The translations under genes and the position numbers were made by a program. From positions 124,001 to 188,000 of the IMG/VR virus record IMGVR_UViG_3300049855_000348: a stretch of DNA of 64,000 nt, one strand, 5' to 3'. Each line of letters opens with the position of its first letter. Position 1 is the stretch's first letter. Shown here piece after piece: positions 3,101 through 55,876 of this stretch. The notes below the pieces were generated by a model. The model was not told where the DNA came from. It saw only the letters and a list, made by a program, of their open reading frames with translations, and ran no database searches.

Positions 3101-6100
3101 ATCGTACCACCACCGGAACCGAACGGACCAACTGTAGTGCCATTGATCCGAGCGAACATGCCAGCAGTGGTTGTCCACACGTCACCATTGGTCGGCGATG
3201 ATGGTGCAGTTCCATGCGGAACACGAAGACCGGCAACGGTTGTGGTCGAGGCTGCGGTACCAAGAAGACCAGACTCAATCCAAAGTGCGTAAGAAGTGGT
3301 GATGGTAGCATTACTACCAGCAGCGGGGGCACCAGAGATCGCAACCGTCGCAGCGTTGGTGATCGTTGAAGAACTGACAAAGGCGTAGGTCGGAGCAGCG
3401 ATGCGGAAAGCTCTCTGAGTAGTGAGTGCGCCACCCGCCCATGTCTTCGTAGCCGACAAGTCGAAAATAATACTCGACGCTTCAGTGCTTGCCGTTTGGG
3501 CGGTATGCGCTCCAGCAGCTACCCGGAAGTCAGCAGTGGCAGCACTACTGTAACTCTGAGATACGATGTCGACGATGCCTTTGGTCTGCGATGCACTACC
3601 GCCGATGGTCATGCCACCAATGCCAACATAAGAGAAACCAATTCCGTCTGTGTAATAGATTCCAGTGCTGTTGCCCGGTGATGTGAAGGTGATGCCTGGG
3701 GCTGAGGCACTGCCATCTAGCGCGACGTATGGTACAAACGCTTGAACCGAACTGGTACTCGCGGTTAGCACTTGAGTGCCGGTTGCTGATAATCCAACAG
3801 CACCACCAGCATTATACATGCCGGTATCATTTGACGTGGGGCCAACCGAGTAAGTTGGGAGAGACGCTGATCCGTTAGGACCACCGTACTGACCTGCTTC
3901 CACTCGGATCGCATAACCACGTGTGATCGTGGCATTCGTGCCAGCAGCAGGAGCACCGGTGACTGACAGTGTTGCTGCCGTAGTGATCGTCGAGGCACCG
4001 ACAAAGGCGTAGGTTGGAGCACGAATAACGAATGCACGCTGAGTTGTCAGGGCACCGGTTGACCACTGGACTGTACGAGAAAGATTGAAGTCAACATCGG
4101 GAACCTCTGTCGATGCCGTGTTACCAGTGCTTGCTGCACCAACGATAACCAACAGTTTTGGAGTTCCGACACCGCTTGCGGTTGGTGCAATGTGTACTTG
4201 ACCAAGCGTACCTGAGCGATGTGGACCTCTAAAGTAGACTGAATCATCAAAGTTGCTGATTCCAGCCTGTACCCAGAGGGCGTAGGTGTTGGTGATGGTG
4301 GCGTTTGTACTAGCGACAGGAGCACCAGTGATAGCGAAGGTAGCGGCGTTGGTGATGGTTGAAGCAGCAACGAAAGAATAGATCGGAGCAGTAATAACAA
4401 AGGCGCGTTGGCTAGTGATATTACCAGTCGCCCATTGTACGGCTCTTCCCAAACCGAAAAGGACATCGATGACTTCTGAACTAGCTGATAATCCAGTGTT
4501 GGCCGGAGCGGTTACCTGAATCAATTTTGGTGTACCGGAGGTGGCAGCGACAGAAGGCGCAATCTCTAATTGACCGGTTGTAGCTGAAACCTGTTGGCCT
4601 CCGAACCCTACCTGACCGTCAAATTGTGAGCGTCCACTTTGTGCCCACATCGTGTATGCGTTGTTGATGATAGCATTGCTACCAGAAGCAGGGGCACCAG
4701 TGATGGCAAAGGTTGCTGCTGTGTTGATCGTCGAAACACCAACGAAGGCGTAGGTCGGAGCCTGAATCAGGAAGGCTCTCTGAGTCGTCAACGTACCTGT
4801 CGCCCATTGAACTGTACGATTCAATGAAAAATCAATATCTGGAACCTCGGTCGACGCAGTGATGCCAGTATTGGGAGTACCTACCACCCGAACAAGTCGT
4901 GGTGTTCCATTACCGGCAGCAGAGGTCGGAGCGATGTCGAGCATCGCCGTACTTCCAGTTACCACACCCTGTGAACCAGAGAGTAAAACTTGGGCACCGA
5001 AGCTGGAGATACCGTTCATGACCCAAAATGCGTAACGGTTAGTAATCGTCGCATTTGTTCCAGCGGTTGGAGCACCAGAAATAGCGAAGGTGGCAGCAGT
5101 CGTAATTGTCGAAGCGCCAACGAAGGCGTAGGTCGGAGCCTGGACAAGGAAAGCTCTCTGAGTCGTCAGCGCACCAGTCGCCCACTGAACCGTTCTGGCA
5201 AAATTGAAGTTCACATCGGGAACTTCAGTGCTCGCAGTCATGTTGGTGTTGGCAGCACCGGTGACGAGGAACGCAGTCTGAACACCTGTGGCAACGGCTG
5301 TAGGAGCCAATGTGAGGCCAGTAGTCGCGGTGTAGGTCAGAGTCGCAGAACCCTGAATGGTATTGGTTCCTGAACCAAAGGCGACTTGACCAGAAGCAAT
5401 CGAGCCACCAATGGTGCCACCGCCAGCGGTGTAGTTGACCGTCACACCATTGATGCGAGCGAAGAGACCGCCAGCAGAGGTAGTCCACAAATCACCATCA
5501 GTTGGTGATGATGGAGCAGTGCCGTGAGGAATGTTCAAACCGGCACGAGAAGTTGACGAGGCCGATGTCAGGACCGATCCACTGAAGAGCGATGGGTTGG
5601 TGTTCCCTGAGTAGATGGCGTAGGTGCCGGTGAAGCCGGTGGAAGATGGACCGATCAAAAGGGTGGCGTTGTTCGTACCAACGGTCTGATCAGCGAGGTA
5701 AGCTCCGATCGCACGAGTGATGGTTGAAGTGGAACCCAGGCTGTGTGCCAGAACCTGAACGCCTGCTACAACCGAGGCGGTGTAAGCTACTGCCGAGGTT
5801 CCGAGAGAAACTGAAACACCAACGACAGCAGAAGTACCACCAGATGTTCCGGTGAGGGTGATTCCAACAGCGGTCTGACCAACACCGCTCAGTGGATTGG
5901 TGGCACCAATGGCGATGATGTTGAGGGAGCTACCAGCACCACCGATGCCCATACGGCCAGCGATGGTTGCTGTCGTACCATCATAGGTGAAGTTCGCACT
6001 TCCCTGGATGGTGTTGGCACCGGAGCCGTAGGCGACCTGATTGGAAGCGATCGAACCGCCGATCGTTCCACCACCTGCACCAAACGGACCAACAGTAGAT

Positions 6101-9100
6101 CCATTGATCTGTGCGAACATGCCGGCAGTGGTGGTCCAAACATCACCATTAGTTGGCGATGATGGAGCAGTGCCGTGCGGAAGACGAACGCTTGAAATGC
6201 TGGTGGTAGCTGCTGGAGCGATGATGGTACTGACCACCGTCAACTGTTGTGTGCTTCCGAAGGTCGCCGCGAGTGCTCCATTGCCGGTGTAGATCTTGAT
6301 AGCATCACCAGCGGTCCTGGTAACCAGTTCCAGGTCACCAGTGCCATAGGCGTTGATTTGTTTGATCTGCGAAGCTCCACGGAAATCAAGCAAGTTTGCC
6401 GCACAGAAAGATGGAGCACGAACAGAATTTGAACCACCTGGGTCTGTTCCTGCGATGATGATGCCACCACCAATAGCAACGTTCGTCGCGGCAACACCAT
6501 TACCAACAGTGACCGAACCAACAGTCGAACTCGTTGCCGAGGTAGTCTCTGGGAAGTTGACAACTGTGACAGTCGAGCCAGAGCGTGTGGCTTCAAGAAC
6601 GCTTGTGGCGACGCTCAGAGCATCATCAACAGCACGAATGACGAAGACACCAGCAGAGGATGCGAGCACATCCCAGAAACGATTGTTTGCTGTTGCTGCA
6701 CCGTTGTTCAAACCAAGTCGCGGAATAGATGCTTGGACAGTGATGAGAGCGTCGCTGGTAGCGCCTGTGGTGTACGAACCACCACGAGCGTGAACGCCAC
6801 CACCAACGAAGGCATCACCGCTGATACCAACACCACCACTGATAATCACTGCACCAGTTGAGGTGCTGGTTGAAGCCGTGGTGTTCTGGAACGTGGTAGG
6901 GGCAGCCGTTGAGAATGTCACCGCACCATTGGCGAAGGTGGCGATGCGGGTGCCAGCCTCGCAGATGGCAACACCGCTGGCATAGGTGATGCCAGAGGTG
7001 TTGTTGGTGATGAAGCTGTAGGCTGGGGTTCCGACAGCGCCGCCGTCGGTAAGGAAGATGCGACCACCGGCGTAGATGTTTCCACCACCGATGCCCACAT
7101 TGGTTACGGCTGTCGTCTGGTCACCGATGATCAGAGCACCAGTGATGGTGTTGGTTGCAGCCGTAGTGAGTGTGCTGCGGATGGTCTTAGCAGCAGCTAA
7201 ACCACCAGCCACGAACAATGCGGCAGCGCCAGCCGTATAACCGGCATCAGTCGAATCCAGAATAGAAACTAAGCCAGCGAAGCTGGATCCATAGGTCGAT
7301 GCTGAATAGATGGCATAAGAGCCGGTGTAAACGGCTGGTGATGTGGTTGCACTGATCGTCAGGTAGGCGCGGTTGGTACCGGCATTCGGGTCGACCAAGG
7401 CAAGCTGGTGGACTCTCGTGATGGTTGAGGCACCACCCTGAACAATCGGGCTCGCCAAGAGAGTGACGACATCATTGCATGTGAAGGCAGAGTTCTGAGT
7501 GGCTGCGGCGACACTGACACCAACAACCATTGTGGTGGCCGCACTCGATCCACGAACGAAGACGATGTTACCACCCTGCGTGGTTCCGGTCAGGCTGTTG
7601 CTTGCCGAAAGATTCAGGATGTACGAAGCCGATGCAGAAGTACCGACACCCATGACGGTGCCAACGTTCGCTGCTCCGGCCACACCAAGACCACCAGCGA
7701 TCACCACAGCACCAGTAGAAGTGTTGGTCGAGGCTGTAGTGCTAGTGAAAGAAGAATCACCAGTGCCAGCAGCGATGGTCAGACGATTTGCGTTGGTGGT
7801 ACGAAGATTCAGAGCGTGAGCGGTAACAGTACCGACAACAGCCGTACCGGCGAATGACCCAACAGCAACTTCAACCAGATTCACCGTGTCATAGCAAACC
7901 AAGGCTGGATTGAAGGTGGTGCCGGTGGCTTCCAGATAGAGGGCTCCAGAAGTCACCGCAGGACTTCCGAGTGAGCCGTTCATCAAAACGGTAACGGCAC
8001 CACCAGTGCGCAACTGCTTCGCCACGCTGAGGCCACCGCTGAGAACCACCGAGGCGGTGCCAATCGCCGAGGCATCAGTCGTATCACTGATGACGACAAG
8101 ACCAGCACCCTGGGTGTAGATGGCACGATTGGTGCCAGCACCAGAAATCGGTTCGATTTCAAGAGCGTTGTAGGTGGTGATCGCACCACCACCTGAGATC
8201 TGAGGAGCGCCGAGGTAGATGCCACGTGCTGTAGCGATGACTCCAGCAGCCGAGATCGAGACACCACCCGCACGGATGGTGAAGGCGTTCGTCATGTTGC
8301 CGGCAGCGGTGACGGCGATGTCGAAGTTACCAGCTACCGCACCAGTGACCGTACCGGTACCGGCGTGGATGACGGATCCATAGACCGCACGCAGGCCAAT
8401 GGCTGCGGTGTAGTTGAAAGCGTTGGCGCTTGTTCTGACAATCGCTCGATTCATGACGCGATTGGCATTATTTGCCGTGAGCACCATCGTCACATCAGAG
8501 AGGAATGGACTTACATCAGCACCTGGATCAGTGATGGTCATGCCTTGGCTGATCGCACCTGTCAGACCGAGGGTAGAGCCATTCCAGGTAAGGTTTGCGC
8601 TTCCAGTGATTGTGTTGGTACCAGAACCATAAGCGACTTGGTTGGAGGCAATCGAACCACCGATCGTACCACTACCAAGCTGAACCGTCGCTCCATTGAT
8701 ACGAACGAAAGCCGCCGTTGTGGTTGTCCACAGATCTCCATCCACCGGCGAAGAAGGAACAGCGCCATGCGGAAGATTGAAACCAGCACCACCAGAGGCT
8801 GATGCTATCGTGGTCACCTTGTTCCCGAATGTCCACTTGTAGAGCGAACCAGAGATCACTGTTCCCGCTGAACTGTCTGCATCGAGGAATCGGTTAGAAG
8901 CAAGCGATGCAGTAACACAGGAGAAGAAGGCACGAGTGCCGGAAACATCATAAACGGTCGTCAACGCCGGAAGAGCCGCATAGGTGTCAGAGGTCAGGAA
9001 GATGCTGGTGTTGTAGCCCAGTGCTCCGACCAGTTGAAGACCTGCACGGGAGGTTGTTCCACCGAGGTAATTCTGAATCTTTGCAAGAATATCACTGTTG

Positions 9101-12100
9101 TCGGAATAGTTGAAATCGAAATAGCTGGTCGATGTCAGAACACCCGACGTGTCGATGGACATCGTGAGCGTCGAACTGCCTGGCATGAATCCGATGCCAG
9201 CGGTGGAACGGAATCCCATGGCATCCGCAGAAATGGCCCCTCCACCGCCAGACACAGCGGAGTAGTGGCCGAAGATAATAGGTGCCGTTCCACTCCTATA
9301 GAAAAGCTGATAAACGCCATTTGCCGAAGTAGAATCGACCTTGAAGATTTCTGAGTTCGCACCGCCCGACAACGTCAGCTTGCCGCCAGCGAAAATGTTT
9401 CCGCCACCGATCGCCACAGAAGTAGCCGCGACACCATTGCCAATAGTGATCGAACCAACAGTAGAACTCGTTGCTGAAGTAGTCTCTGGGAAATTGATGT
9501 GCGTGACAGTCGAGCCAGAACGAACGGCTTCAAAGGCAATCGAAGCGGTGTTCAAAGCATCGTTGAGAGCACGCAGTACGAACGTACCCGAAGAGGTTGC
9601 GTACGAATCCCAGAACCGATTGTCTACTGTGGCACCTCCATGATTCCAAGAGATACGCGGTGCAGATCCCTGAATCGTCAGTGCAATGTCGGAAGTAGAA
9701 CCAGAGATATAACTTCCACCACCGGCGTGGATACCGTTTCCAACAAAGAGATCTCCGTTGATGCCAGCACCACCAGTGACAACAAAAGCACCAGTGGTGG
9801 TAGAGGTGGAGGTGGTGCTGTTATCCACCAACACACTGTTCGACCCAGCGGTACCGGCGATAATATGCAGATTTCCATTTGTTTGTGAGATATATGAATT
9901 GAATGCTATGCTATCGGTAAACTGCAAAGTCGTATCGGCACCACTACCATTTGAGGCAATACGATGGATGATATTCGCACGAAGAGTCGTGCTAGTGGCG
10001 TTGACCTCATACACATTCAAACGACTTGTGGTGGAGGATAGAGAAACGTTCGGATCAACACCGATACGGACAAACAAAGAACCAATCGCAGCACCAGCAA
10101 CGATATTACCACCGCCGATACCAACGTTGGTTCCAACAGTTGAACCGTCACCGATATTGACAGCACCGGTAAGTGTTGTGGTAGAGGCTGTGGTACTTCT
10201 AATGGTGACCGTCTGTCCGGTGGTCTTGGCCACAGTGAAAGTGCTGTCAGCACTTACCGCAAGCAAACCATCACTAGCAGCGATGGGCAATGTACTTCCT
10301 ACCGTGACACGGAAGTCTGTTCCCGTGGGAACGCCGATGTAAATGTGGCCAGTAGAGAAAAATGTAGCGCCATCAACACTTCCAGGAGCCGGACCACTGC
10401 TGTGCGTGATGGTGCGCTGCGTACCACTGAATTCGATGCTGGTATTGACGGTCAGCAGTGATCCATCAAACGTCAGATTCGCCGATCCCTGAATCGTGTT
10501 TGCTCCGGATCCAAACGCGACTTGGTTGACTGCGATCGTACCACCGATGATGCCAGCAGCAGACAACGTCGAGTTCACCCACAGTGTGCCGTTGTAGCGA
10601 AGAAGATCACCGGTCGTAGGTGAGGTGATCGTGACATCCGAGATGTTGGTCAGAGCCGGCAGAACATCAACATTCACCAGGATCTTACCAAGCGTCGGGT
10701 GTGCTCTGGCAACGGTACCGATTCGGATCTGATTCGCTGGTGACGTTGGTTGCGTGGCAGTCAATGTTCCAGAAGTCGTGAGCCACAACATATCACCATC
10801 TGAAAATGCCGACGTGTTGACATCGCTGGCAATTCCACTGGTGACAACATAGCCATCCGAGTTGTTGGCGATGGGGACCGTCACGATACCGATGGAGCGG
10901 AAGCCAGTGGAGTTGGCGTTGGTGGCCAACGTGATATTTGGCCTGAAACCAGTCGCACCCGAGATGTAGACGACCTTTCCAGCCGCAATGGTTGAGCCGG
11001 TGCTATTTCTGACCAAGGCAACCGATTCTTGCCCCATGTGAACGACCTGCACGTCGTTCCAGTAAGTCATGGCGTTCTGGTCTGAATCGTAGTAGAATCG
11101 GCCCTCTGACAGAGCCGGAACCGAGGCACCGGTGTCCAATTGTCCGTAACGGAAGCTGACAGCCTTGGAGGTCGAATTGAAGGTGAACGTTGCGTCACCG
11201 GCAAGCGTGTCGAGAGCACTACCGTAGCCAATCTGAGTGGCTGCAAGAGTACCCAGAATCGTACCAGTTCCTGCCGGCAGATCCGCAGCCACCAAGGCTC
11301 TGAACGTTGGAACCGCTAAACCACCACTGGTTGGGCCAGCGAAGACAAGGTTGGCAGCCTGATTCGTCAGCGTGCCAGTCAACGTTCCCGAGGTGGTGAC
11401 TGGCGAGCCAGAGACCGAGAAGATCGACGGGAGTGACAGTCCAACCGAGGTGACCGTGCCACCACCTCCACCAGCACCGACAGCAACCCAGCCAGTGTTC
11501 CCAGCGCCGGATTCCTTGACGTAGAGAGTGGTCGACGTGCCGCCATCGGTACGCTGGAAGATGTCACCAACAGAACCAGTGACGACACCCTCAGGAGTGC
11601 CAGTGCCACGCTTGATGTTTTTGGCGATGATGACGCCGGCAGCGTTGGTAAAGTCCGTGCCATCGAAGGTCAGATTCGCCGAACCCTGAATGGTGTTCGT
11701 GCCCAGGCCGAAGGCCACCTGATTGGCTGCGATCGAGCCACCGATTGAGCCACCAGCACCGGCATCGAGTTGAACGGTCACACCACCACGGCGAGCGAAG
11801 ACACCAGTCGACTCAACCCAGAAGTCACCATCCTGAGGAGTCGAAGGGGCAGCACTCTGAGCGATGTTCAGACCGCCACGAGTTGCAGAAGAGTTGGCAA
11901 GGACACGACCAGAGACCTGTGCATCGCCGGTGATCTCGACGCCATTGACCGACACCGCCAAGCGGTCAGTACCCATGACAACCGTGACCATTTTCTCGGC
12001 AGCAACAGTGCGGTCGAAGTAGAAACCGATACGACTCGGCCCGCTATGAGCTTCGAGCCAGGACTTGTCGCCATCCGCCTGCGGAGCGGCAAAAGCGAGG

Positions 12101-12162
12101 TAGGAGTTGTCACCAAGGACAACCGAGCGGAAACCCGTATCTCCCATCCATGATTGTTTCAT
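178..12162 (-). CDS. Giant (3994 aa) repeat-built tail fibre / adhesin-like virion protein
   Basis: Uninterrupted 12-kb ORF, very rich in G/S/T/A. It contains recurrent modules GTIGGSIAxNQVAxGSGxNTIxGSA, PHGTAPSSPxxGDxWTT, STxTxTGAxVxxGGxGI and ASTExxDxxFxxxRTVQWATGALTTQRA, of the kind seen in long phage fibres. It sits in the late region. Confidence 0.8.
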   Translation of the reverse strand: MKQSWMGDTGFRSVVLGDNSYLAFAAPQADGDKSWLEAHSGPSRIGFYFDRTVAAEKMVTVVMGTDRLAVSVNGVEITGDAQVSGRVLANSSATRGGLNIAQSAAPSTPQDGDFWVESTGVFARRGGVTVQLDAGAGGSIGGSIAANQVAFGLGTNTIQGSANLTFDGTDFTNAAGVIIAKNIKRGTGTPEGVVTGSVGDIFQRTDGGTSTTLYVKESGAGNTGWVAVGAGGGGGTVTSVGLSLPSIFSVSGSPVTTSGTLTGTLTNQAANLVFAGPTSGGLAVPTFRALVAADLPAGTGTILGTLAATQIGYGSALDTLAGDATFTFNSTSKAVSFRYGQLDTGASVPALSEGRFYYDSDQNAMTYWNDVQVVHMGQESVALVRNSTGSTIAAGKVVYISGATGFRPNITLATNANSTGFRSIGIVTVPIANNSDGYVVTSGIASDVNTSAFSDGDMLWLTTSGTLTATQPTSPANQIRIGTVARAHPTLGKILVNVDVLPALTNISDVTITSPTTGDLLRYNGTLWVNSTLSAAGIIGGTIAVNQVAFGSGANTIQGSANLTFDGSLLTVNTSIEFSGTQRTITHSSGPAPGSVDGATFFSTGHIYIGVPTGTDFRVTVGSTLPIAASDGLLAVSADSTFTVAKTTGQTVTIRSTTASTTTLTGAVNIGDGSTVGTNVGIGGGNIVAGAAIGSLFVRIGVDPNVSLSSTTSRLNVYEVNATSTTLRANIIHRIASNGSGADTTLQFTDSIAFNSYISQTNGNLHIIAGTAGSNSVLVDNSTTSTSTTTGAFVVTGGAGINGDLFVGNGIHAGGGSYISGSTSDIALTIQGSAPRISWNHGGATVDNRFWDSYATSSGTFVLRALNDALNTASIAFEAVRSGSTVTHINFPETTSATSSTVGSITIGNGVAATSVAIGGGNIFAGGKLTLSGGANSEIFKVDSTSANGVYQLFYRSGTAPIIFGHYSAVSGGGGAISADAMGFRSTAGIGFMPGSSTLTMSIDTSGVLTSTSYFDFNYSDNSDILAKIQNYLGGTTSRAGLQLVGALGYNTSIFLTSDTYAALPALTTVYDVSGTRAFFSCVTASLASNRFLDADSSAGTVISGSLYKWTFGNKVTTIASASGGAGFNLPHGAVPSSPVDGDLWTTTTAAFVRINGATVQLGSGTIGGSIASNQVAYGSGTNTITGSANLTWNGSTLGLTGAISQGMTITDPGADVSPFLSDVTMVLTANNANRVMNRAIVRTSANAFNYTAAIGLRAVYGSVIHAGTGTVTGAVAGNFDIAVTAAGNMTNAFTIRAGGVSISAAGVIATARGIYLGAPQISGGGAITTYNALEIEPISGAGTNRAIYTQGAGLVVISDTTDASAIGTASVVLSGGLSVAKQLRTGGAVTVLMNGSLGSPAVTSGALYLEATGTTFNPALVCYDTVNLVEVAVGSFAGTAVVGTVTAHALNLRTTNANRLTIAAGTGDSSFTSTTASTNTSTGAVVIAGGLGVAGAANVGTVMGVGTSASASYILNLSASNSLTGTTQGGNIVFVRGSSAATTMVVGVSVAAATQNSAFTCNDVVTLLASPIVQGGASTITRVHQLALVDPNAGTNRAYLTISATTSPAVYTGSYAIYSASTYGSSFAGLVSILDSTDAGYTAGAAALFVAGGLAAAKTIRSTLTTAATNTITGALIIGDQTTAVTNVGIGGGNIYAGGRIFLTDGGAVGTPAYSFITNNTSGITYASGVAICEAGTRIATFANGAVTFSTAAPTTFQNTTASTSTSTGAVIISGGVGISGDAFVGGGVHARGGSYTTGATSDALITVQASIPRLGLNNGAATANNRFWDVLASSAGVFVIRAVDDALSVATSVLEATRSGSTVTVVNFPETTSATSSTVGSVTVGNGVAATNVAIGGGIIIAGTDPGGSNSVRAPSFCAANLLDFRGASQIKQINAYGTGDLELVTRTAGDAIKIYTGNGALAATFGSTQQLTVVSTIIAPAATTSISSVRLPHGTAPSSPTNGDVWTTTAGMFAQINGSTVGPFGAGGGTIGGSIASNQVAYGSGANTIQGSANFTYDGTTATIAGRMGIGGAGSSLNIIAIGATNPLSGVGQTAVGITLTGTSGGTSAVVGVSVSLGTSAVAYTASVVAGVQVLAHSLGSTSTITRAIGAYLADQTVGTNNATLLIGPSSTGFTGTYAIYSGNTNPSLFSGSVLTSASSTSRAGLNIPHGTAPSSPTDGDLWTTSAGGLFARINGVTVNYTAGGGTIGGSIASGQVAFGSGTNTIQGSATLTYTATTGLTLAPTAVATGVQTAFLVTGAANTNMTASTEVPDVNFNFARTVQWATGALTTQRAFLVQAPTYAFVGASTITTAATFAISGAPTAGTNATITNRYAFWVMNGISSFGAQVLLSGSQGVVTGSTAMLDIAPTSAAGNGTPRLVRVVGTPNTGITASTEVPDIDFSLNRTVQWATGTLTTQRAFLIQAPTYAFVGVSTINTAATFAITGAPASGSNAIINNAYTMWAQSGRSQFDGQVGFGGQQVSATTGQLEIAPSVAATSGTPKLIQVTAPANTGLSASSEVIDVLFGLGRAVQWATGNITSQRAFVITAPIYSFVAASTITNAATFAITGAPVASTNATITNTYALWVQAGISNFDDSVYFRGPHRSGTLGQVHIAPTASGVGTPKLLVIVGAASTGNTASTEVPDVDFNLSRTVQWSTGALTTQRAFVIRAPTYAFVGASTITTAATLSVTGAPAAGTNATITRGYAIRVEAGQYGGPNGSASLPTYSVGPTSNDTGMYNAGGAVGLSATGTQVLTASTSSVQAFVPYVALDGSASAPGITFTSPGNSTGIYYTDGIGFSYVGIGGMTIGGSASQTKGIVDIVSQSYSSAATADFRVAAGAHTAQTASTEASSIIFDLSATKTWAGGALTTQRAFRIAAPTYAFVSSSTITNAATVAISGAPAAGSNATITTSYALWIESGLLGTAASTTTVAGLRVPHGTAPSSPTNGDVWTTTAGMFARINGTTVGPFGSGGGTIGGSIAADQLAIGSGTNTISGSADLTYTVNGGLVFNRPAVSGGAPVAFSLNCANHTNNAASTEVNDVRWDFLRTVQWATGALTTQRAFRILQPTYAFVGASTITTAATVSIGGAPVAGTNATITTSVALDIESGLLRTAASTTSVSGFRLPHGTAPTSPVNGDVWTTTSGLFARINSSTVGPFGSGTIGGSISAEQIAFGSGVNTIQGSSELLYSSIDGLTLAPTAQGSGTPETFTIIGAANGAATGNTASTEVSDVNFALNRSVRWAAGTLTTQRFFSIKAPTITFASASTATTAATVAIDNAPQAGTNATITNAYALWVQAGNTRLQGNLTVTGTATLSTASISTLADISSTSGQANFYSATSVTVSDSNFVIAGNVAPGKQLNFQVDNHTGNTLTTFDTGAQTSSRTFTLPVVTGNDTFVTRGMTQTLSGINTFSNTTASTNKTSGAVVISGGVGIAGRVYLDTIFINPAAIASGTAANMLAIRFDGAAHTLTPASTELLDAWFNLARTVQFATTTPTTQRAVLISAPTYACSGAGQIITTAATFAIEGPAAAGTNVTITNPYALWVQSGKTQLDGPVTTGGTLTVNTDALIAGNGVGGKGGTLTSQTSGAWTFNCAIVGTIHNQGGAGQGAGGWSITQSAGTAAGGGTPMLRLIGGAHTGALASTEYNSVLFNFSATQQFNTGALTTQRCVLIMAPTYGFVGASTITTAATFAIDNAPAAGTNATLTNSYALWVQAGRSQFDGSIRITQPAGTGSPQQAFIILGGAHTSLTASTEIHDVNFSLDRTVQWATGAITTQRAFVVAAPTYAFVGTSTITSAATFAITGAPVAGTNATLTNSYALWVQAGRSQFNGAVLSNNATAGIGYSTGAGGAVTQITSRTTGVTLNTVAGAITLFTVAPTLNAWVSFTVTNSAVAATDTIVVSVKSGTNTYIACVSAVAAGSFRITFASIAGTASDAPVINFAVVKAVAA
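542..607. repeat. 66-bp perfect direct repeat, copy 1 (copy 2 at 869-934)
   Basis: aactgcgaacgaccagcctgcacccagagagcgtaggagttggtcagggttgcattggtaccagcg is identical at both positions, compared base by base. Confidence 0.95.
869..934. repeat. 66-bp perfect direct repeat, copy 2
   Basis: Identical to 542-607; offset 327 nt (109 codons), so in frame. Confidence 0.95.
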
Positions 12163-45343: not shown

Positions 45344-45371
45344 ATCCTAGCGACATTTTGGTCTAAGTCAA
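45344..45371 (-). promoter_or_regulatory. Sigma70-type promoter TTGACT-16-TAGGAT with a TAGAC-N6-GTCGC spacer
   Basis: Minus strand TTGACT TAGAC CAAAAT GTCGC TAGGAT gagATGATG; the second ATG is 6 nt from the -10 hexamer. Confidence 0.85.
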
Positions 45372-51635: not shown

Positions 51636-52305
51636 ATGCCTCTTCCCATTCGGCCTGGGGTGTTACACCACGATGAGATTTTTCGGCAGTCTTACCGAGC
51701 GGCATCTCATGTGCGCAGGCTTCGACCGGAACGTAGAGATGACTGAGCGAAATGTTGAGCGCCCAGCCGGCAGCCTGCCCGACCAGATCACCCATCAGCA
51801 TGTTGTATTCTTCATCCATCGCTTCGGTCACCGAGGCGAACTGCTCAGGGGACAGTTCGAGCTTCGAGTAGGCAGCGATGTCTCCGAACCAGCGATCGAC
51901 GAAGATCACACCACCGCCATTGGCCTTGGCGGCAGCAACCTGGGCGATGAGTTTGCGAGCCAGGATGCCGGGCAATTCCCGCTGCATCTGCTCACGGAAT
52001 CCCATGAGGTTGATGTCGTTGTAGGTCTCAGGGTAGGGCTTACCCTGTTCCTTGAGTGATGCCTGAGTCTGCTGGAACCATGCGGTGGAGCAGGAGGGCA
52101 CCGAGAACTGGGTCAGGGATTTGTAGTCGTAGGAGGACAGATCGAACGAGCCGTCGATGGGGAGATCCGGGGTCTTCCCCTCCATCAGATCGGCCAGAGC
52201 ACTCTTCAGATCCGTGATCAACGTACTCTTTCCGACGCCATGTGCGCCGGAAAGAGTCAGGATGGTGATGATGCCACGTGGAAACAGGTTGTGAGAACGC
52301 GGCAT
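51532..52305 (-). CDS. P-loop nucleotide kinase-like ATPase (AAA_28/NadR/dNMP kinase type)
   Basis: SGAHGVGKSTL and FVDRWFGDIAAY; TAATG overlap with the upstream gene. Confidence 0.75.
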   Translation of the reverse strand: MPRSHNLFPRGIITILTLSGAHGVGKSTLITDLKSALADLMEGKTPDLPIDGSFDLSSYDYKSLTQFSVPSCSTAWFQQTQASLKEQGKPYPETYNDINLMGFREQMQRELPGILARKLIAQVAAAKANGGGVIFVDRWFGDIAAYSKLELSPEQFASVTEAMDEEYNMLMGDLVGQAAGWALNISLSHLYVPVEACAHEMPLGKTAEKSHRGVTPQAEWEEAYAAANHYTHSYRTVVVTAKDRLQRVAEVILGCFS

Positions 52306-52694
52306 TACTTGCCGGCCTTGATGTCGGCGAGGCTCAGATCATCCGAACGACGACGGCGCTTCGGCAGGTGAGCGTCCGAGACGAAGCCCTCAGGCAGGAT
52401 CGGGAACACGCACTTGTCGTAGTATTCCAGACCCTTCTCCGTCAGGATGAAGTCGCAGCGCGAGGTCTCGCCCTTCAGATTGATCTGAACACCTTGGAGA
52501 TCAGCAGGCGCATCTTCGATCAGGCCAGCACTCTTGGCCGGGTAGACCACATTGCGCTTCTCGTTGCGGCTGAGAACTCGGTAGTCATTCTTGACGACCC
52601 AGAATACCGCAGCCAGAGAGCAGCCGGGACGCGGCTTTTCAGGGAATGCGTTGTAATACGTGGTCTTCGGGTGCATTGGCTTCGGTGAGCCCAT
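52305..52694 (-). CDS. Hypothetical protein (129 aa, MGSPKPM...)
   Basis: GAAAGG SD; downstream of a palindrome-containing promoter. Confidence 0.7.
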   Translation of the reverse strand: MGSPKPMHPKTTYYNAFPEKPRPGCSLAAVFWVVKNDYRVLSRNEKRNVVYPAKSAGLIEDAPADLQGVQINLKGETSRCDFILTEKGLEYYDKCVFPILPEGFVSDAHLPKRRRRSDDLSLADIKAGK

Positions 52695-52722
52695 AGTATC
52701 GCCTTTCGGTGCGGTCGCTCTG

Positions 52723-52763: not shown

Positions 52764-53090
52764 TCACGACTTGGCGTGCAGGATTCCCATAGCAGCGGAG
52801 AGCACTACCGCCAAGTGACCATCATCAATGGACTCGGGTTTCCGAATGCCGGGCATCCGGTAAAAATTCATTCTCGGCGGGAACTCTTCCTCCATCTGCT
52901 CAGCCAGAGCATGACCGATCCGGTCGTTCTGTTGTGCAGTCTTCACCAAGACCTCGACTTGCTGAATCGTGACGACGGCTTCACGACTGACGTTGATGCG
53001 GGTGACCTTCCGAGGTGTGAGCGTGCGCTCCCCGCCAGCGAGAGGGTTCTTCACTGGTCCCTGGTAGTTCGAGAAATCCAGGTCCACCAT
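52764..53090 (-). CDS. Hypothetical protein (about 108 aa, MVDLDFSNY...)
   Basis: Last ORF before the non-coding gap; start uncertain (53090 or 53129). Confidence 0.55.
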   Translation of the reverse strand: MVDLDFSNYQGPVKNPLAGGERTLTPRKVTRINVSREAVVTIQQVEVLVKTAQQNDRIGHALAEQMEEEFPPRMNFYRMPGIRKPESIDDGHLAVVLSAAMGILHAKS

Positions 53091-53129
53091 GGCTGGCAGA
53101 CTACTGGCTTGTAGCACCCACACAAGCAA

Positions 53130-53890
53130 TAGCAGTCAAAGGATCGCTAGGATTGACCCATCAAAATTGCCTTACTCAAAACTGCAAGGGTCAAAAAAAA
53201 CCCGGCGGAGTAAAATTTATAAAATTTATAAAAGTCATAAATTACTTGACAAAATATAATCTATCTGAGAATTGCCTTTGTCATGTCTTGCATTGCCAGG
53301 GTCCTGCCCTTGGATCAAGGTGGTAACAACTTAGCGCGAAGCGCGATAACTTACACTGACTGAGCTAAGCTAGGCTGTCCTTACAAGGAGAGTAAGAACA
53401 GCAAGACTTACAAGACTTGCAAGTCTTTCGCATTTTTGAAAGACGTGGTAGGGACTGCATAGACATCACTGGGGTATGAGAAGTCGCTACGCGAACTGGC
53501 ATGAACCTATGTTCTTGAGGATGACCACACCTTCATGAGCAAGTCTTCGCGCTTCGCGCTGAGGGTGTCTTGCCCTTGAGCTAAGGGTATGAAAGCATCA
53601 CTGGGATAGCTGGGGTCATGCAAGGCTTGTAAGCCGAGCAAGGCTTTCAAACCACACAGCCTAGCAAGCCACCGGCTTTCCGTTTTCTGGCCATCTGACG
53701 GGCTGTAGGTCGCCCAATGACCATCCAGGGTCAACCTGTCTCAAATCGCCCAGGAACGGCTCGATTGAGTACCCCTGATGAGATACGGATTGGTGTGACA
53801 CGGGTCAATAGAGACACTACCACATCCAGTATCGTGTTGTATTGACAGTTTTTGGGTGATGCCACACTTCGGCCTTCCGGTCTAAGTCAA
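53130..53890. other. Candidate replication origin / control region
   Basis: About 760 nt without a credible ORF at the strand switch. It holds an AT-rich tract with TAAAATTTA tandem repeats, six CAAG-D-CTT octamers and two oppositely oriented GCGC-GAA-GCGC hairpins. Confidence 0.6.
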
Positions 53891-53905
53891 CACCCAGAGG
53901 AAGTC

Positions 53906-54523
53906 ATGCAAACGATCTACGACATCGAAACCATTGCCGTTCTCGATGCCAAGTCGATCAACCGTCGTTCCTTCCGATCTGGACCAGCCTCACGCATCCT
54001 TTCAATTTACGATGACCCTGAGATCCTACGGAAGCGACTTGAAGCGAATGTCCCCTGCCCGCTCAAAATGGCGATTGAAAAAAATGGTTACGATCCCGCC
54101 AATCCTCCGAAGTTGAAGCGCGGTCATTACATGGATCCGAAGGAGTTGTTCTACCGCACCATGAAAGTTCAGATGGCTGGTGGAATCGACAAAGCGGGTC
54201 GTGATGGAGAACGTTTCATCGAACTGCTGACCCTGCTGGCGAATGGTTATATGGGTCGCATCATGTTCAAGGATACCGGCTCGATGGCCAATCTCACTGA
54301 AGACATGGTGCAAGAAGCTATCACCAAGTGTGCGATGATCGTCATGCGCTTCAATCCCTGGGACCCCCGCGCCACCAAACCCACTCTCAATAACGCTTTC
54401 GCCTATTTCACCACGGTTATCCGCAATCGCTTCTATGAAACACTCACTTGCCCATTGGTCGGGTCGGATGTGTTCCTCGAAGATCTCAAAACCGAAAACC
54501 AGTCGATCGGTGATTTGATTTGA
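53906..54523 (+). CDS. gp55: Late-transcription sigma factor, T4 gp55-like
   Basis: HYMDPKEL...LANGY...F...EDMVQEAI...RFNP...AFAYFTTVIRNRF parallels gp55 (YVNNKEL...IAEG...NF...EMIADGI...NFD...PHAYIT); SD GAGGAAG. Confidence 0.8.
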   Translation: MQTIYDIETIAVLDAKSINRRSFRSGPASRILSIYDDPEILRKRLEANVPCPLKMAIEKNGYDPANPPKLKRGHYMDPKELFYRTMKVQMAGGIDKAGRDGERFIELLTLLANGYMGRIMFKDTGSMANLTEDMVQEAITKCAMIVMRFNPWDPRATKPTLNNAFAYFTTVIRNRFYETLTCPLVGSDVFLEDLKTENQSIGDLI

Positions 54524-54547
54524 CTTAGCGACAATTTGGTCTAGATT
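54520..54547 (+). promoter_or_regulatory. Candidate promoter TTGACT-16-TAGATT overlapping a GCGAC-N6-GTCTA site
   Basis: TTGACT ta GCGAC AATTTG GTC TAGATT; palindrome shifted 2 nt relative to the other copies. Confidence 0.6.
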
Positions 54548-54759
54548 GGCTTCCTGGAGGAAGTCCGTTTGACGAACTGTGCGACTGGCATCACGAGTGC
54601 ATCTCGTGACTCATCAACCAATGCGTCGATCTCCGCTGGCTCGATCTCGCCTTTGGCGGCTCGGGTGGCGATCAACTCGAATTTGTCGTGCAGGATTTCT
54701 TCCAGCCGCTTCGAGAGCGTGAAGATGTCACGCGCATGGTTTTTCTGAGATTCCGCCAT
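54541..54759 (-). CDS. Small helical hypothetical protein (72 aa, MAESQKNHARDIF...)
   Basis: Typical codons (ATC, GAG, GAC); amphipathic; its ATG shares the CATG palindrome with the primase start. Confidence 0.55.
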   Translation of the reverse strand: MAESQKNHARDIFTLSKRLEEILHDKFELIATRAAKGEIEPAEIDALVDESRDALVMPVAQFVKRTSSRKPI

Positions 54760-55876
54760 GGCAGATTTATCCACCCCAGACGACATCAGGATCGAAAAAC
54801 TTCGCCGCTGGCTGGAGGGTAAGGGGATTGACGTGGTACAGATCGGCAACGAACTGTGCTGCCCATCCCCCTTCAAAGAGCGTGAAAAGCGCAAGACCGA
54901 CCCCCATTACCACGACGATAAGCGCCGGCTGTCGATCACAGTGGTCCAGGAAGCCGGTATCCCCACCCTGCGTTGGCAGTGTTGGTGGTCGAAGGGGAAG
55001 ACCGGCAAGCCGTTCGGTGGTCGGTCGGCCTATGCCGTCTCGATCCTGGCCAAGACCTCACAGGAGGAGATCGCCAAGCTGCTGGATTTAGAGTACGACG
55101 CCCAGGTCGAAGCCGCCGAGACCAACCTCGACAAGGCTATTGCCATTCTCGGTCAGCCGGCCCGCCAGTTGGAGGCACGCCGTCAGTTCGCTGCCGCCAA
55201 GCAGGCCAAGGTCCGTCGACCTCACCAATTGCCGACCAGCCTGCTGCGCATGTGGGATGGAAGCCCACTGACCATGGGCGGTGAGCAGATGGTCACCGAG
55301 CGTGGCATCCTGCCTGAGATCGGGAAGACCTACGGGCTGTTGTGGGACTATGAGGAACAGGCTGTGGTGATGCCCTGGGCTGATCGTGATCAACGAGTCA
55401 TGACCTACCAGTGTTGGTACGGCAGCAAGTATCGTTTCCCCAAGGAGAGTGAAGACCTGATGACGAAGATGGATGCCATCTTCGGACTGCACACCTGGAC
55501 CCCTGGTAGACCACTCATTCTTTGTGAGGGTGGCTTCACAGCCATGTCAGTTTGCGGTATGGCTCTTGGTGGATCAACGATCTCTGATGAGCAGATCGCT
55601 CTGATCCACGGTTGTGCTCCGTCGATGACGGTGGTTGCCTTCGACAACGACACCGGTGGTCTCTACGGGGCACAGGGTGTCACCAAAGCTCTCTCCCAGG
55701 CTATGCCCTACACCAGAGTTGTGCCGGTCTTCGCTCCCACTGGGAATGATTGGAACGATGTCATCAAGGTGAATGGCTTTCAAAAGACGATGGAGCTTTT
55801 CGCTCGACGGATCAAGGATTCTCTCACGATGGAACCGGCACACGCCATTGCATTGCAGTATCGAGGCACCCGATGA
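54758..55876 (+). CDS. gp61: DNA primase, T4 gp61/DnaG-like
   Basis: N-terminal Zn-finger-like CCPSPF...CWW; TOPRIM motifs LILCEGGFTA, VAFDNDTGG and DWND. Confidence 0.88.
   Translation: MADLSTPDDIRIEKLRRWLEGKGIDVVQIGNELCCPSPFKEREKRKTDPHYHDDKRRLSITVVQEAGIPTLRWQCWWSKGKTGKPFGGRSAYAVSILAKTSQEEIAKLLDLEYDAQVEAAETNLDKAIAILGQPARQLEARRQFAAAKQAKVRRPHQLPTSLLRMWDGSPLTMGGEQMVTERGILPEIGKTYGLLWDYEEQAVVMPWADRDQRVMTYQCWYGSKYRFPKESEDLMTKMDAIFGLHTWTPGRPLILCEGGFTAMSVCGMALGGSTISDEQIALIHGCAPSMTVVAFDNDTGGLYGAQGVTKALSQAMPYTRVVPVFAPTGNDWNDVIKVNGFQKTMELFARRIKDSLTMEPAHAIALQYRGTR

What the first reader, a model, noticed from the sequence alone, without database searches (positions are those of the whole stretch)
53130..53890. 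Candidate bidirectional origin with opposed GCGAAGC mini-hairpins, palindromic iterons and an unwinding element
Seen: (a) AT-rich 53190-53270 with TAAAATTTA x2.5; (b) a 16-nt inverted repeat t[t/c]agcgcgaagcgcga (53331-53346 plus strand, 53547-53562 minus strand), each forming GCGC-GAA-GCGC; (c) six CAAG-D-CTT octamers (53402, 53411, 53420, 53540, 53621, 53639) whose AAG-N-CTT core is palindromic; (d) direct repeats TGAGCTAAG, CATCACTGGG and GGGTCAA; (e) a promoter-like ATCGC-TAGGAT at 53143-53153 pointing into the AT-rich tract and TTGACTTAGAC at 53880-53890 pointing in from the other side. Established: d(GCGAAGC) forms an unusually stable hairpin found at phage G4-type priming signals, and T4 origins are a middle promoter plus a downstream unwinding element forming an R-loop. 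The region lies at the strand switch between helicase and primase operons.
Basis: partly seen in the sequence, partly recalled or inferred. Interest (0 to 1): 0.72.

Follow-up and report, generated by a model that had tools for sequence, protein, structure and literature searches.

The report
Conserved origin-like control region in jumbo phage
An 815-base non-coding stretch between the helicase and primase gene blocks of an uncultured 220-kb phage carries promoters, the genome's most A+T-rich tract, short repeats and two mirrored mini-hairpins; related phages keep the same layout, so it is most likely the replication origin, though this is unproven.

Summary

**What the region is.** It is the 815-nt gap (53091-53905) between a leftward block (108-aa gene, helicase operon) and a rightward block (gp55-like late sigma, primase, UvsY, UvsX). 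The genome is a complete 220,489-bp T4-like jumbo phage from freshwater sediment.

**Conservation.** All relatives whose contig spans it keep a 520-900 nt gap at this position.
- **Hairpins:** A C-GAA-G triloop hairpin lies on the + strand at the left and on the - strand at the right. Stems covary; loop and closing pair do not change.
- **Repeats:** Arrays of short, often palindromic units lie between the hairpins. They differ between lineages, as iterons do.
- **A+T content:** The window holds the most A+T-rich 80 nt of the genome.
- **Promoters:** Several promoters fire rightward into the cassette.

**Against a single RNA.** There is no Rfam hit, no strand bias in the inverted repeat, and no RNA run listed for the gap.

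**Reading.** Best explanation: a lytic replication origin resembling T4 oriE and, in layout, RSF1010 oriV (confidence about 0.45). Main rival: an early-transcription control region or long leader. No initiator protein was identified, and replication itself could not be tested.

The parts
52764..53090 (-). Left flanking gene, 108 aa, unknown function, very fast-evolving.
   Evidence: ORF. Orthologues sit next to the gap in L001, L004, L005, L006, L007 and L028. Identity is 19-64%, while the gp55-like protein is 58-87% identical in the same loci.
53143..53153 (+). P0: the -10 half (ATCGCTAGGAT) of the genome's 36-copy promoter class, without its TTGACT -35. It points rightward.
   Evidence: PWM score 8.7. 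The same GTCGCTAGGAT -10 is used by the full promoter at 45354(-). Conserved in L001, L004, L005, L007 and L028. The 53121-53150 block is 87% identical to L001.
53188..53203 (+). GGGTC-A8-CCC tract (A run 53192-53199).
   Evidence: An A7-8 run after GGGT(C/T)C is conserved in L001, L004, L005 and L028. Function unknown.
53204..53275 (.). A+T-rich tract holding TAAAATTTA twice. Candidate unwinding element, or UP element of P1.
   Evidence: The 80-nt window from 53209 is 79% A+T, top of the genome. Its length is not well conserved in L004 and L005.
53246..53272 (+). P1: TTGACA, 15 nt, GAGAAT. A sigma70-like promoter reading into the cassette; start inferred near 53280.
   Evidence: cTTGACAa plus GAGA(A/C)T is conserved in L001, L004, L005, L006 and L028. 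No ORF follows it in any relative (gene calls).
53296..53352 (+). Left arm of the inverted repeat, with mini-hairpin gcgc-GAA-gcgc at 53334-53344 and a purine-rich 3' flank.
53384..53427 (.). Repeat array: CAAGACTT / CAAGACTT / CAAGTCTT at a 9-nt period (53402, 53411, 53420), preceded by GTAAGAACAG.
   Evidence: The block TAAGAACAG(T/C)AAGACTTA is shared with L006 and L014. Units differ in L004/L005 (TTCTWAGA, 10-nt period) and in L028 (GATTATGGTTAG direct repeats).
53423..53444 (.). GTCTTTC-gcattttt-GAAAGAC palindrome with a T run at the end of the array. Candidate melting point inside the cassette.
   Evidence: Read. GTCTTTCG followed by an A/T run is conserved in L001, L004 and L028. The inner 40-nt A+T maximum is 80-93% in L004-L007 and L028, but only 65% in the window.
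53464..53476 (+). CATCACTGGGGTA, copy 1 of a direct repeat (copy 2 at 53596-53608).
53482..53515 (+). Central block E (GTCGCTACGCGAACTGGCATGAACC...). It resembles the -10 plus leaderless start of the genome's promoter class but has a spoiled -10. It contains a small stem tcgc-TAC-gcga.
   Evidence: 93% identical to L001, the best-conserved 30 nt of the gap. Conserved in L004 and L005. PWM 7.2. Hairpin listed.
53541..53597 (-). Right arm of the inverted repeat, with mini-hairpin gcgc-GAA-gcgc on the - strand (53559-53549).
53621..53646 (.). Two further CAAGGCTT units (53621, 53639), outside the inverted repeat.
   Evidence: Not conserved in L001.
53666..53690 (+). Weak terminator-like hairpin (AAGCC-ACC-GGCTT) followed by a T-rich run.
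   Evidence: 87% identical to L001. Absent from L004 and L005.
53798..53868 (+). P2 with its conserved upstream block: TTGACA 53842-53847, 15 nt, CACACT 53863-53868. Promoter of the gp55-like gene.
   Evidence: TTGAC is invariant in 10 of 10 aligned relatives. A metatranscriptome contig begins at 53886.
53880..53890 (-). Perfect TTGACTTAGAC (-35 half of the 36-copy promoter class) facing leftward. It overlaps P2 face to face and has only a weak -10 (AAGTGT).
   Evidence: PWM 20.1 of a possible 20.1. Conserved as GTCTAAGTC-like sequence in L001, L004, L006, L016 and L026.
53906..54523 (+). Right flanking gene: gp55-like late sigma factor, 205 aa.
   Evidence: phrog_234, E 3.7e-6. 27 relatives found.
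52305..52697 (-). 130-aa conserved protein of the helicase operon with a predicted winged-helix fold. Candidate DNA-binding partner (inference only).
   Evidence: AF2 pLDDT 83. All top structural matches are MarR/PadR-type winged helices, but they are weak: Foldseek E about 0.3, VIA Z 5-6.

Best explanation
The gap is a cis-acting DNA region, most likely the phage's lytic replication origin.

**Shown.**
- Rightward promoters (P0, P1) face a cassette bounded by a 45-57-bp imperfect inverted repeat.
- Each arm carries a C-GAA-G triloop mini-hairpin, on the + strand at the left and on the - strand at the right.
- Between the arms lie an array of short, lineage-specific repeat units, an A/T run and a highly conserved central block.
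- The genome's most A+T-rich tract lies just to the left of the cassette.

**Inferred mechanism.**
- Transcription from P1 (and P0), and/or a phage protein bound to the repeats, opens the A+T-rich DNA.
- The DnaB-like helicase unwinds outward.
- The exposed single strands then fold into the mini-hairpins. Such hairpins bind SSB poorly (reported for the related GCGAAAGC-type hairpin, PMC13037366).
- The hairpins mark where the adjacent Toprim primase starts a leading strand.
- The GAA-hairpin strand is the template for synthesis that moves away from the centre on both sides. The two forks would therefore run outward, in the same direction as transcription of the helicase block (leftward) and the primase block (rightward).
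For: **Anatomy and statistics**
- Motifs are verified and strongly enriched.
- The tract is the A+T maximum of the genome.
- Of the non-coding gaps longer than 250 nt, this one stands out. The largest others hold the tRNA and tmRNA genes, and the four other gaps inspected look like ordinary coding sequence.

**Conservation**
- The gap of 520-900 nt is syntenic in every relative whose contig spans it.
- Loop and closing pair are invariant; 68 of 68 stem cells pair; 3 of 4 stem pairs show compensatory changes; 0 of 500 shuffles reach this.
- The GAA strand is the same relative to the flanking genes in every relative that keeps both hairpins.
- The full arms form a significant inverted repeat in 8 of 8 relatives (z -4.3 to -9.9), with no strand bias.
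- Repeat units have 9-10 or 16-nt periods and change between lineages. L028 has direct repeats that cannot form helices with each other.

**Context**
- The site lies at the divergence of the helicase and primase operons, at the minimum of cumulative AT skew and a local maximum of cumulative GC skew.

**Precedents**
- T4 oriE is an early promoter plus evenly spaced iterons. T4 oriE, oriF and oriG sit at transcription-divergence and compositional switch points (PMC3016281).
- RSF1010 oriV has iterons plus two 40-nt inverted repeats on complementary strands that fold into hairpins. ssiA contains the CCGAAGG mini-hairpin (PMC8567376, PMC13037366).
Against: - There are no replication data of any kind.
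- Skew is confounded by the switch in transcription strand.
- No initiator was found: Rep_3, RepC and RepB' searches were negative. The neighbouring 257-aa ATPase is nucleotide-kinase-like. The 108-aa neighbour has no recognisable fold. The winged-helix call for the 130-aa protein is weak.
- The main A+T tract is upstream of P1, is short in L004 and L005, and could be an UP element.
- Generic DNA folding gives the hairpins only -4 to -5 kcal/mol, with unremarkable z-scores.
- The hairpins are not recognisable in the most distant relatives (L014, L008-L011).
- The gap is dense in promoter parts, which fits a transcription-control reading equally well.
- T4-type phages can replicate without any dedicated iteron origin.
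Confidence: 0.45

Rival explanations
1. It is an early-transcription control region, not an origin. Tandem rightward promoters (P0, P1, P2) and a leftward element at 53890 set up interference or long leaders for the two replication operons and the late-sigma gene. The repeats are operator sites for a phage regulator such as the winged-helix protein. The hairpins and inverted repeat act in the leader RNAs, for example in processing or stability.
For: - Four promoter-like elements and one reversed -35 lie within 800 nt. Two of them belong to a 36-copy genome-wide class.
- P2 and the reversed element overlap face to face.
- Block E mimics a promoter plus a leaderless start.
- A candidate winged-helix protein lies in the adjacent operon.
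- A metatranscriptome contig starts just downstream of P2.
Against: - The repeats lie 120-200 nt downstream of P1 and 400 nt upstream of P2, which is an unusual place for operators.
- They do not score as promoter -35 modules.
- Conservation of GAA on opposite strands, and the strand-symmetric inverted repeat, are not explained by a single leader RNA.
- No terminator T run follows the hairpins.
Confidence: 0.25
2. It encodes a stable structured non-coding RNA of about 300-400 nt, transcribed from P1. The long-range stem is a processing stem, and the repeats are binding motifs, as in a protein sponge.
For: - Both strands fold far better than shuffles (z -5.3 and -6.0).
- A promoter lies upstream and a weak terminator downstream.
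- L028 and L006 repeats contain AGGA-type motifs, all on the + strand.
Against: - No Rfam family matches, even at a relaxed threshold.
- The stem shows no strand bias once composition is controlled.
- Repeat units change identity between lineages and are direct repeats in L028.
- In L012 and L006 the local hairpins are kept at the expense of long-range pairing.
- No RNA run is listed for the gap, and the one metatranscriptome that holds the flanking genes has no contig in it. Coverage there is sparse, so this is weak evidence.
- The terminator is not conserved.
Confidence: 0.08
3. It is another protein-bound cis site: a centromere-like partition site or a packaging (pac) site built from repeat arrays.
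For: Arrays of short palindromic repeats at helical-turn spacing resemble parC/parS and P1 pac. One structural match of the 130-aa protein is a plasmid centromere-binding protein.
Against: - There is no ParA, ParM or TubZ-type gene nearby; the ATPase is kinase-like.
- The site is not near the structural gene block of the window (the giant tail-fibre-like ORF); a terminase gene was not looked for.
- The genome record has direct terminal repeats located elsewhere.
- This reading does not explain the paired GAA hairpins.
Confidence: 0.06
4. The hairpins are N4-type single-stranded hairpin promoters on the template strands. They would drive outward early transcription of both operons by a virion RNA polymerase.
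For: N4 vRNAP promoters are short hairpins with GGA or GAA triloops (PMC13037366). The geometry fits outward transcription. The genome encodes a 3,994-aa protein.
Against: - The giant protein has no PHROG, Pfam or PDB match to vRNAP. Its features point to tail-fibre domains.
- Only this one pair of intergenic hairpins has conserved flanks.
- Ordinary sigma70-type promoters abound in the genome.
Confidence: 0.04
5. It is an invertible DNA switch: inverted repeats flank a promoter-like block that a recombinase flips.
For: Arms of 23-57 nt flank a 190-330-bp segment that holds promoter-like block E.
Against: - No recombinase was identified among the neighbouring genes examined.
- No inversion joint appears in the laid DNA runs.
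- The -10 of block E is spoiled.
- An invariant asymmetric loop is not expected at recombination sites.
Confidence: 0.03

Closest known systems
IncQ plasmid RSF1010 oriV (iterons + A+T-rich region + ssiA/ssiB)
   Same: - It has an iteron array and an A+T-rich segment.
- Two roughly 40-nt inverted repeats lie on complementary strands. Each folds into a hairpin when unwound and serves as a priming signal.
- ssiA contains a C-GAA-G mini-hairpin (CCGAAGG).
- Leading strands start at the two sites (PMC8567376, PMC13037366).
   Different: - Here the arms bracket the repeats instead of lying side by side beyond them.
- No RepC, RepB' or Rep_3 homologue was found (although two of the controls did not ring).
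- The nearby primase is Toprim/DnaG-like, not an archaeo-eukaryotic type.
- The host replicon is a 220-kb lytic T4-like phage.
- There is no sequence homology.
Bacteriophage T4 oriE
   Same: It combines an early-type (factor-independent) promoter with a cluster of evenly spaced short direct repeats that are conserved in syntenic regions of relatives. It lies near a point where transcription diverges and nucleotide composition shifts (PMC3016281).
   Different: - T4 iterons are 12-nt direct repeats, with no flanking hairpin pair described.
- The role of the T4 iterons is itself unproven.
- The gene context differs (repEA/repEB).
- There is no sequence similarity.
T4 oriF/oriG and the T7 primary origin (promoter plus A+T-rich element, RNA primer or R-loop)
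   Same: A promoter is directed into a non-coding stretch with A+T-rich DNA, next to replication genes. G-rich blocks (GGGGGGTTYGGGGGGA) in L006 and L012 could favour RNA-DNA hybrids.
   Different: - In the window the strongest A+T tract is upstream of P1, not downstream.
- No MotA-type box was identified.
- The T4 and T7 origins have neither iterons nor hairpins.
Phage G4 / St-1 / alpha3 complementary-strand origins (DnaG-dependent ssi)
   Same: Extraordinarily stable mini-hairpins lie at the site where a DnaG-type primase starts a primer on SSB-coated single-stranded DNA (PMC13037366).
   Different: - Those sites carry GCGAAAGC or GCGTTAGC tetraloop-type hairpins in a single-stranded genome.
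- Here the hairpins are triloops, in a pair, in duplex DNA.
Bacteriophage lambda ori
   Same: Iterons with internal dyad symmetry are followed by an A+T-rich segment and a palindrome, and the origin is activated by nearby transcription (from my own knowledge of lambda, not checked here).
   Different: Lambda ori lies inside the initiator gene O. No initiator gene is recognised here.

Membership tests
T4 oriE-type origin | An early, factor-independent promoter next to the repeats. | tested here: met
   P1 (TTGACA, 15 nt, GAGAAT) is conserved in 5-6 relatives. This rests on sequence only; the transcription start was not mapped.
T4 oriE-type origin | A cluster of evenly spaced short repeats, also present in syntenic regions of related phages. 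| tested here: met
   The period is 9 nt in the window and L001, 10 nt in L004/L005 and 16 nt in L028.
T4 oriE-type origin | Replication initiates there. | not testable with these tools
   Only assembler contigs were available, so no coverage gradient could be read.
T4 oriF/oriG R-loop origin | A promoter with an A+T-rich unwinding element immediately downstream. | tested here: inconclusive
   The A+T maximum (53209) is upstream of P1 and downstream of P0. The A+T-rich zone inside the cassette is strong in L004-L007 and L028 but weak in the window, at 65%.
T4 oriF/oriG R-loop origin | A persistent RNA-DNA hybrid that serves as primer. | not testable with these tools
   This needs R-loop mapping.
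IncQ (RSF1010) oriV | Two inverted-repeat ssi signals on complementary strands, each with a hairpin. | tested here: met
   Arms are 23-57 nt and significant in 8 of 8 relatives. The C-GAA-G hairpin covaries.
IncQ (RSF1010) oriV | Iterons plus an A+T-rich segment. | tested here: met
IncQ (RSF1010) oriV | Cognate RepC initiator and RepB' primase. | tested here: not met
   There is no match to PF06504, PF16793 or PF01051 in the complete genome. The controls for the first two rang nowhere, so sensitivity is unknown.
G4-type DnaG-dependent ssi | A mini-hairpin of the GCGNNAGC or GCGNAGC class in the strand used as template. | tested here: met
   GCGAAGC lies within gcgc-GAA-gcgc on both arms, and the variants keep C-GAA-G.
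G4-type DnaG-dependent ssi | Specific recognition by a DnaG-type primase. | not testable with these tools
   A Toprim primase gene lies at 54758-55876. The complex predictor did not fold the submitted complex (the 130-aa protein with repeat-array DNA), and no primase-hairpin complex was submitted.
N4 vRNAP hairpin promoter | A hairpin with a 5-7-bp stem and a GGA or GAA triloop. | tested here: inconclusive
   Stems are 4-5 bp with a GAA loop.
N4 vRNAP hairpin promoter | A virion T7-like RNA polymerase. | tested here: not met
   The 3,994-aa ORF has no PHROG or PDB match, only one weak sub-threshold Pfam hit to an uncharacterised family (DUF5779), and its leads are tail-fibre-like.
Described structured RNA (Rfam) | A match to a covariance model. 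| tested here: not met
   There are 0 hits at the gathering score. The best relaxed hit scores 21.7 bits against a cutoff of 80.
Single-strand structured ncRNA (undescribed) | Strand-specific pairing and a conserved fold across relatives. | tested here: not met
   z-scores are equal on both strands. The centre is not alignable and its repeats differ.

The most novel reading that the evidence does not exclude
A new origin design in a T4-like jumbo phage clade. An iteron and A+T core is activated by transcription and bracketed by two inverted single-strand initiation hairpins (C-GAA-G mini-hairpins). The phage's own DnaG-type primase starts the two outward leading strands on these hairpins. This would be an IncQ-like 'ssi' mechanism that arose independently in a large lytic phage, with lineage-specific iterons read by a still-unidentified phage protein, possibly the 130-aa winged-helix protein.
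Probability: 0.28. Interest if true: 0.78.

Novelty: new variant of a known kind. Interest (0 to 1): 0.6.

Why it matters
Replication origins are poorly defined in T4-type phages, and for jumbo and uncultured phages I found no description: one literature search returned none. Even the role of the T4 oriE iterons is unresolved (PMC3016281).

This region offers a compact cassette of about 300 bp, resolved by comparative analysis, with testable parts: loop, stem, repeats, A/T run and promoters.

If it is an origin, three things follow:
- Hairpin priming signals so far described for single-stranded phages and IncQ plasmids (PMC13037366, PMC8567376) would also operate in a large duplex phage.
- It would give a handle for a minimal replicon for an uncultured phage clade.
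- It would link origin position to co-orientation of replication with the two replication-gene operons.

If it is instead a transcription hub, it would still be an unusual conserved control region in front of the late-sigma gene.

Tried and rejected
- **Public phage records:** No DNA or protein match for the region or for the gp55-like gene. More distant gp55-like loci in IMG/VR lack both the gap and the hairpins.
- **Rfam and tRNA scans:** Nothing found.
- **One-strand RNA test:** The + strand duplex energies looked better in nearly all relatives. The advantage disappeared once each strand was compared with its own shuffles, so this was rejected as evidence for a + strand RNA.
- **Repeats as copies of the promoter -35 module:** A PWM scan gave no hits at the repeats. 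Rejected.
- **Neighbouring 257-aa ATPase as ParA, initiator or loader:** It is nucleotide-kinase-like (AAA_28 / thymidylate kinase). Rejected.
- **108-aa neighbour as the repeat binder:** It has no confident fold. L004 and L005 share a repeat type but their proteins are only 33% identical. No support.
- **N4-type vRNAP:** No signal in the giant ORF.
- **IncQ proteins:** Absent.
- **Complex prediction (130-aa protein with repeat DNA):** Not folded by the tool, so it is no evidence either way.
- **Other large 'gaps' in my crude gene map:** They are ordinary G+C-rich, coding-like sequence without repeats.
- **Small conserved ORFs in the gap:** Mini-ORFs after P0 and block E differ in frame and length between relatives. 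Gene callers placed no gene in the gap in any relative.
- **Sigma-54 reading of block E:** The spacing and the -12 element do not fit (by inspection).
Full report
**Setting.**
The window is bases 124001-188000 of a single 220,489-bp virus record with direct terminal repeats, rated complete. The record carries 33 tRNA genes and a tmRNA gene elsewhere. It has no close relative among deposited phages. The sequence was found at full identity in a freshwater-sediment metagenome.

The finding lies in the 815-nt gap 53091-53905. To its left, on the - strand, are:
- a 108-aa gene;
- a 130/147-aa gene;
- a nucleotide-kinase-like ATPase;
- a DnaB/gp41-like helicase.

To its right, on the + strand, are a gp55-like late sigma factor, a Toprim primase and a UvsY-like protein. 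Relatives also show RecA/UvsX there. The statement that the region sits at the strand switch between the helicase and primase operons is therefore correct.

**Check of the observation.**
All listed motifs are at the stated coordinates, and all are far from chance.
- Six of the genome's sixteen + strand CAAGDCTT octamers lie within 240 nt.
- The 14-nt core of the inverted repeat occurs only at these two places.
- TAAAATTTA, TGAGCTAAG and CATCACTGGG each have two + strand copies in the genome, and both copies of each lie here.
- The 80 nt starting at 53209 are 79% A+T, the genome maximum; the runner-up is 70%.
- The 16-nt repeat is the core of a longer imperfect inverted repeat.

**A genome-wide promoter class clarifies item (e).**
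Thirty-six sites share TTGACTTAGAC, six bases, then GTCGCTATACT. Most are followed after about nine bases by the start codon, so these mRNAs appear to be leaderless.
- ATCGCTAGGAT at 53143 (+) is the -10 half of this class without a -35.
- TTGACTTAGAC at 53890 (-) is a perfect -35 half without the -10.

Two further + strand promoters of a plain sigma70 type were missed:
- P1: TTGACA at 53246, 15 nt, GAGAAT.
- P2: TTGACA at 53842, 15 nt, CACACT.

P2's TTGAC is invariant in all ten aligned relatives. The only metatranscriptome that holds this phage has a contig beginning at 53886, just past P2.

**Relatives.**
A protein search with the gp55-like gene found 27 relatives. Context look-ups showed the same gene order and a gap of 520-900 nt in every contig that spans the site: L001, L004, L005, L006, L007, L012/13, L014/15 and L028.

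Several other contigs stop inside the gap. L026 and L027 begin exactly at the right hairpin arm, and together these two contigs were recorded in nine samples. This is what a perfect inverted repeat of k-mer length or more does to a de Bruijn assembly.

More distant gp55-like loci in IMG/VR have no gap and no hairpins. The module is therefore specific to this clade.

**What is conserved.**
1. **Hairpins.** A hairpin with loop GAA closed by C-G lies on the + strand near the helicase side. A second lies on the - strand near the sigma/primase side.
   - Stems differ between lineages: GCGC, GCAC/GTGC, GGTGC/GCACC, GCCGC/GCGGC and CCCC/GGGG. They always pair.
   - Over 17 arms, 68 of 68 stem cells pair, and three of four pairs show changes on both sides. 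The closing C-G and the last two loop bases never change; the first loop base is G in 16 of 17 arms. No shuffle out of 500 reaches this.
   - A purine-rich 3' flank is also shared.
   - Invariant centre with free stems is the opposite of what a palindromic duplex binding site shows. It argues for a folded single strand.
2. **Inverted repeat.** The arms extend beyond the hairpin into a 45-57-pair imperfect inverted repeat, significant in 8 of 8 relatives (z -4.3 to -9.9).
   - After comparing each strand with its own shuffles there is no strand preference.
   - In L006 and L012 the two arms have different stems, so the local hairpins are kept at the cost of arm-to-arm pairing.
3. **Repeat arrays.** Between the arms lies an array of short units that differ by lineage:
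   - (C/T)AAG-N-CTT at a 9-nt period in the window and L001;
   - the same unit in L006, L007 and L014;
   - TTCT-W-AGA at a 10-nt period in L004 and L005;
   - 12-nt direct repeats GATTATGGTTAG in L028;
   - CGATCG-type units in L012.
4. **Landmark.** GTCTTTCG followed by an A/T run ends the array in four lineages. The inner A+T maximum is 80-93% in most relatives.
5. **Central block.** The block 53482-53515 is the best-conserved part, 93% identical to L001. It looks like the -10 plus leaderless start of the genome's promoter class, with a spoiled -10.
6. **Promoters.** P0, the A7-8 tract, P1, P2 with its upstream block, and the reversed -35 element are all conserved.

**RNA or DNA?**
Both strands of 53280-53700 fold much better than shuffles, but this comes from the inverted repeat. 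Several points speak against a single conserved RNA:
- no Rfam hit, even at a relaxed threshold;
- no strand bias in the repeat;
- a centre that cannot be aligned and is made of lineage-specific, partly direct repeats;
- a weak terminator that is not conserved;
- no RNA run listed for the gap;
- no metatranscriptome contig in the gap. That sample covers only about a fifth of the neighbouring genes, so this last point is weak evidence.

I therefore read the region as cis-acting DNA. Its single strands, and possibly its transcripts on both strands, fold locally.

**Mechanism proposed.**
The steps below are inferred, except where a call is cited.

The hairpin strand with GAA is the + strand on the left and the - strand on the right. 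A polymerase copying those strands moves away from the centre on both sides. That direction matches transcription of the helicase block (leftward) and of the primase block (rightward).

This is the geometry expected if the cassette opens in the middle and each exposed strand presents a hairpin as a start signal for a leading strand. Opening could come from transcription out of P0/P1, from a protein on the repeats, or from both. The A/T runs and the genome's A+T extreme lie there.

Published precedents fit part by part.
- **T4 oriE** combines an early promoter with evenly spaced iterons. T4 oriE, oriF and oriG sit at transcription-divergence and compositional switch points (PMC3016281). In this genome the site lies at the minimum of cumulative AT skew and a local maximum of cumulative GC skew, although transcription direction confounds this.
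- **RSF1010 oriV** has iterons, an A+T-rich segment and two 40-nt inverted repeats on complementary strands. These fold into hairpins and are used by a dedicated primase. ssiA contains CCGAAGG (PMC8567376, PMC13037366).
- **Mini-hairpins** of the related GCGAAAGC type bind SSB poorly (PMC13037366).

**What does not fit, or is missing.**
- No initiator was identified.
  - The ATPase next door is kinase-like.
  - The 108-aa neighbour evolves very fast and has no recognisable fold.
  - The genome has no Rep_3, RepC or RepB' match.
- The 130-aa protein of the helicase operon is predicted with good confidence (pLDDT 83). It matches only winged-helix regulators, but weakly (Foldseek E about 0.3, Z 5-6). 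It is a lead, not a finding.
- Standard DNA folding parameters give the hairpins only -4 to -5 kcal/mol.
- The main A+T tract lies upstream of P1 and may be its UP element.
- The density of promoter parts makes a transcription-control reading a serious rival.

**Other readings considered.**
- N4-type hairpin promoters are attractive because of the GAA triloops and a 3,994-aa ORF in the window. That ORF shows tail-fibre-like features and no polymerase signal.
- A centromere or pac site, and an invertible switch, lack the required partner genes. No inversion joints were seen.

**Verdict.**
- **Observation:** confirmed and considerably strengthened by comparative evidence.
- **Interpretation as a bidirectional origin:** partly supported. 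It is the best single explanation (about 0.45) but untested.
- **Family membership:** The architecture meets the sequence-level criteria of a T4 oriE-like origin and mirrors the layout of IncQ oriV. It fails membership in the IncQ family at the protein level. I therefore file it as a new variant of a known kind (iteron-type, transcription-linked origins with ssi-like hairpins), not as a member of any described family.

Noticed in passing
whole genome; in the window e.g. 45354(-), 37967(-), 37581(-): There are 36 copies of a rigid promoter: TTGACTTAGAC, 6 nt, GTCGCTATACT. Most are followed after about 9 nt by the ATG of the gene, which implies leaderless mRNAs. Several copies have a palindromic spacer (AGCGAC-N6-GTCGCT) that could be an operator.
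   Followed up: partly
window 178-12162 (-): A 3,994-aa ORF with no PHROG or PDB match and only one weak, sub-threshold Pfam hit (DUF5779). Language-model neighbours point to tail-fibre or trimeric-fibre domains.
   Followed up: partly
window 53842-53890: P2 (+) and the perfect -35 module at 53890 (-) lie face to face and share the -10 region (CACACT / AAGTGT). This layout suggests mutual exclusion of RNA polymerase binding.
   Followed up: no
window 54523-54554 (-): A -10-type element of the promoter class (GTCGCTAAGT, preceded by TAGACCAAATT) lies just past the end of the gp55-like gene and points back into it. It could be an antisense promoter.
   Followed up: no
window 54541-54750 (-): A small minus-strand ORF of about 69 aa lies between the gp55-like and primase genes. 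It is conserved at 58-77% in L002, L005, L025, L026 and L028. Function unknown.
   Followed up: partly
L006 4557-4573; L012 4520-4536: A G-rich block GGGGGGTT(C/T)GGGGGGA is shared by two distant relatives inside the cassette and is absent from the window. G runs of this kind could favour RNA-DNA hybrids.
   Followed up: no
L026/L027 position 1; also L002, L003, L008-L011, L016, L025: Contigs of relatives often end inside this gap. L026 and L027 begin exactly at the right hairpin arm, and together they were recorded in nine samples. This is consistent with assembly breaks at a long perfect inverted repeat.
   Followed up: partly
genome 1-60 and 220430-220489 (outside the window): Both ends of the record consist of a 15-nt tandem repeat (TCAAGCTCAAGCTCG). 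The record is classed as having direct terminal repeats.
   Followed up: no
whole genome: C-GAA-G hairpins with stems of 4 bp or more are about three times more frequent than in shuffled sequence (24 against 8.1 +/- 3.8). Most lie inside genes.
   Followed up: no
genome 18491-23006, 39879-40769 and 85462-85837 (outside the window): Two tRNA clusters (33 genes in all) and a tmRNA gene with tag DDHVEYGRIALAA.
   Followed up: no
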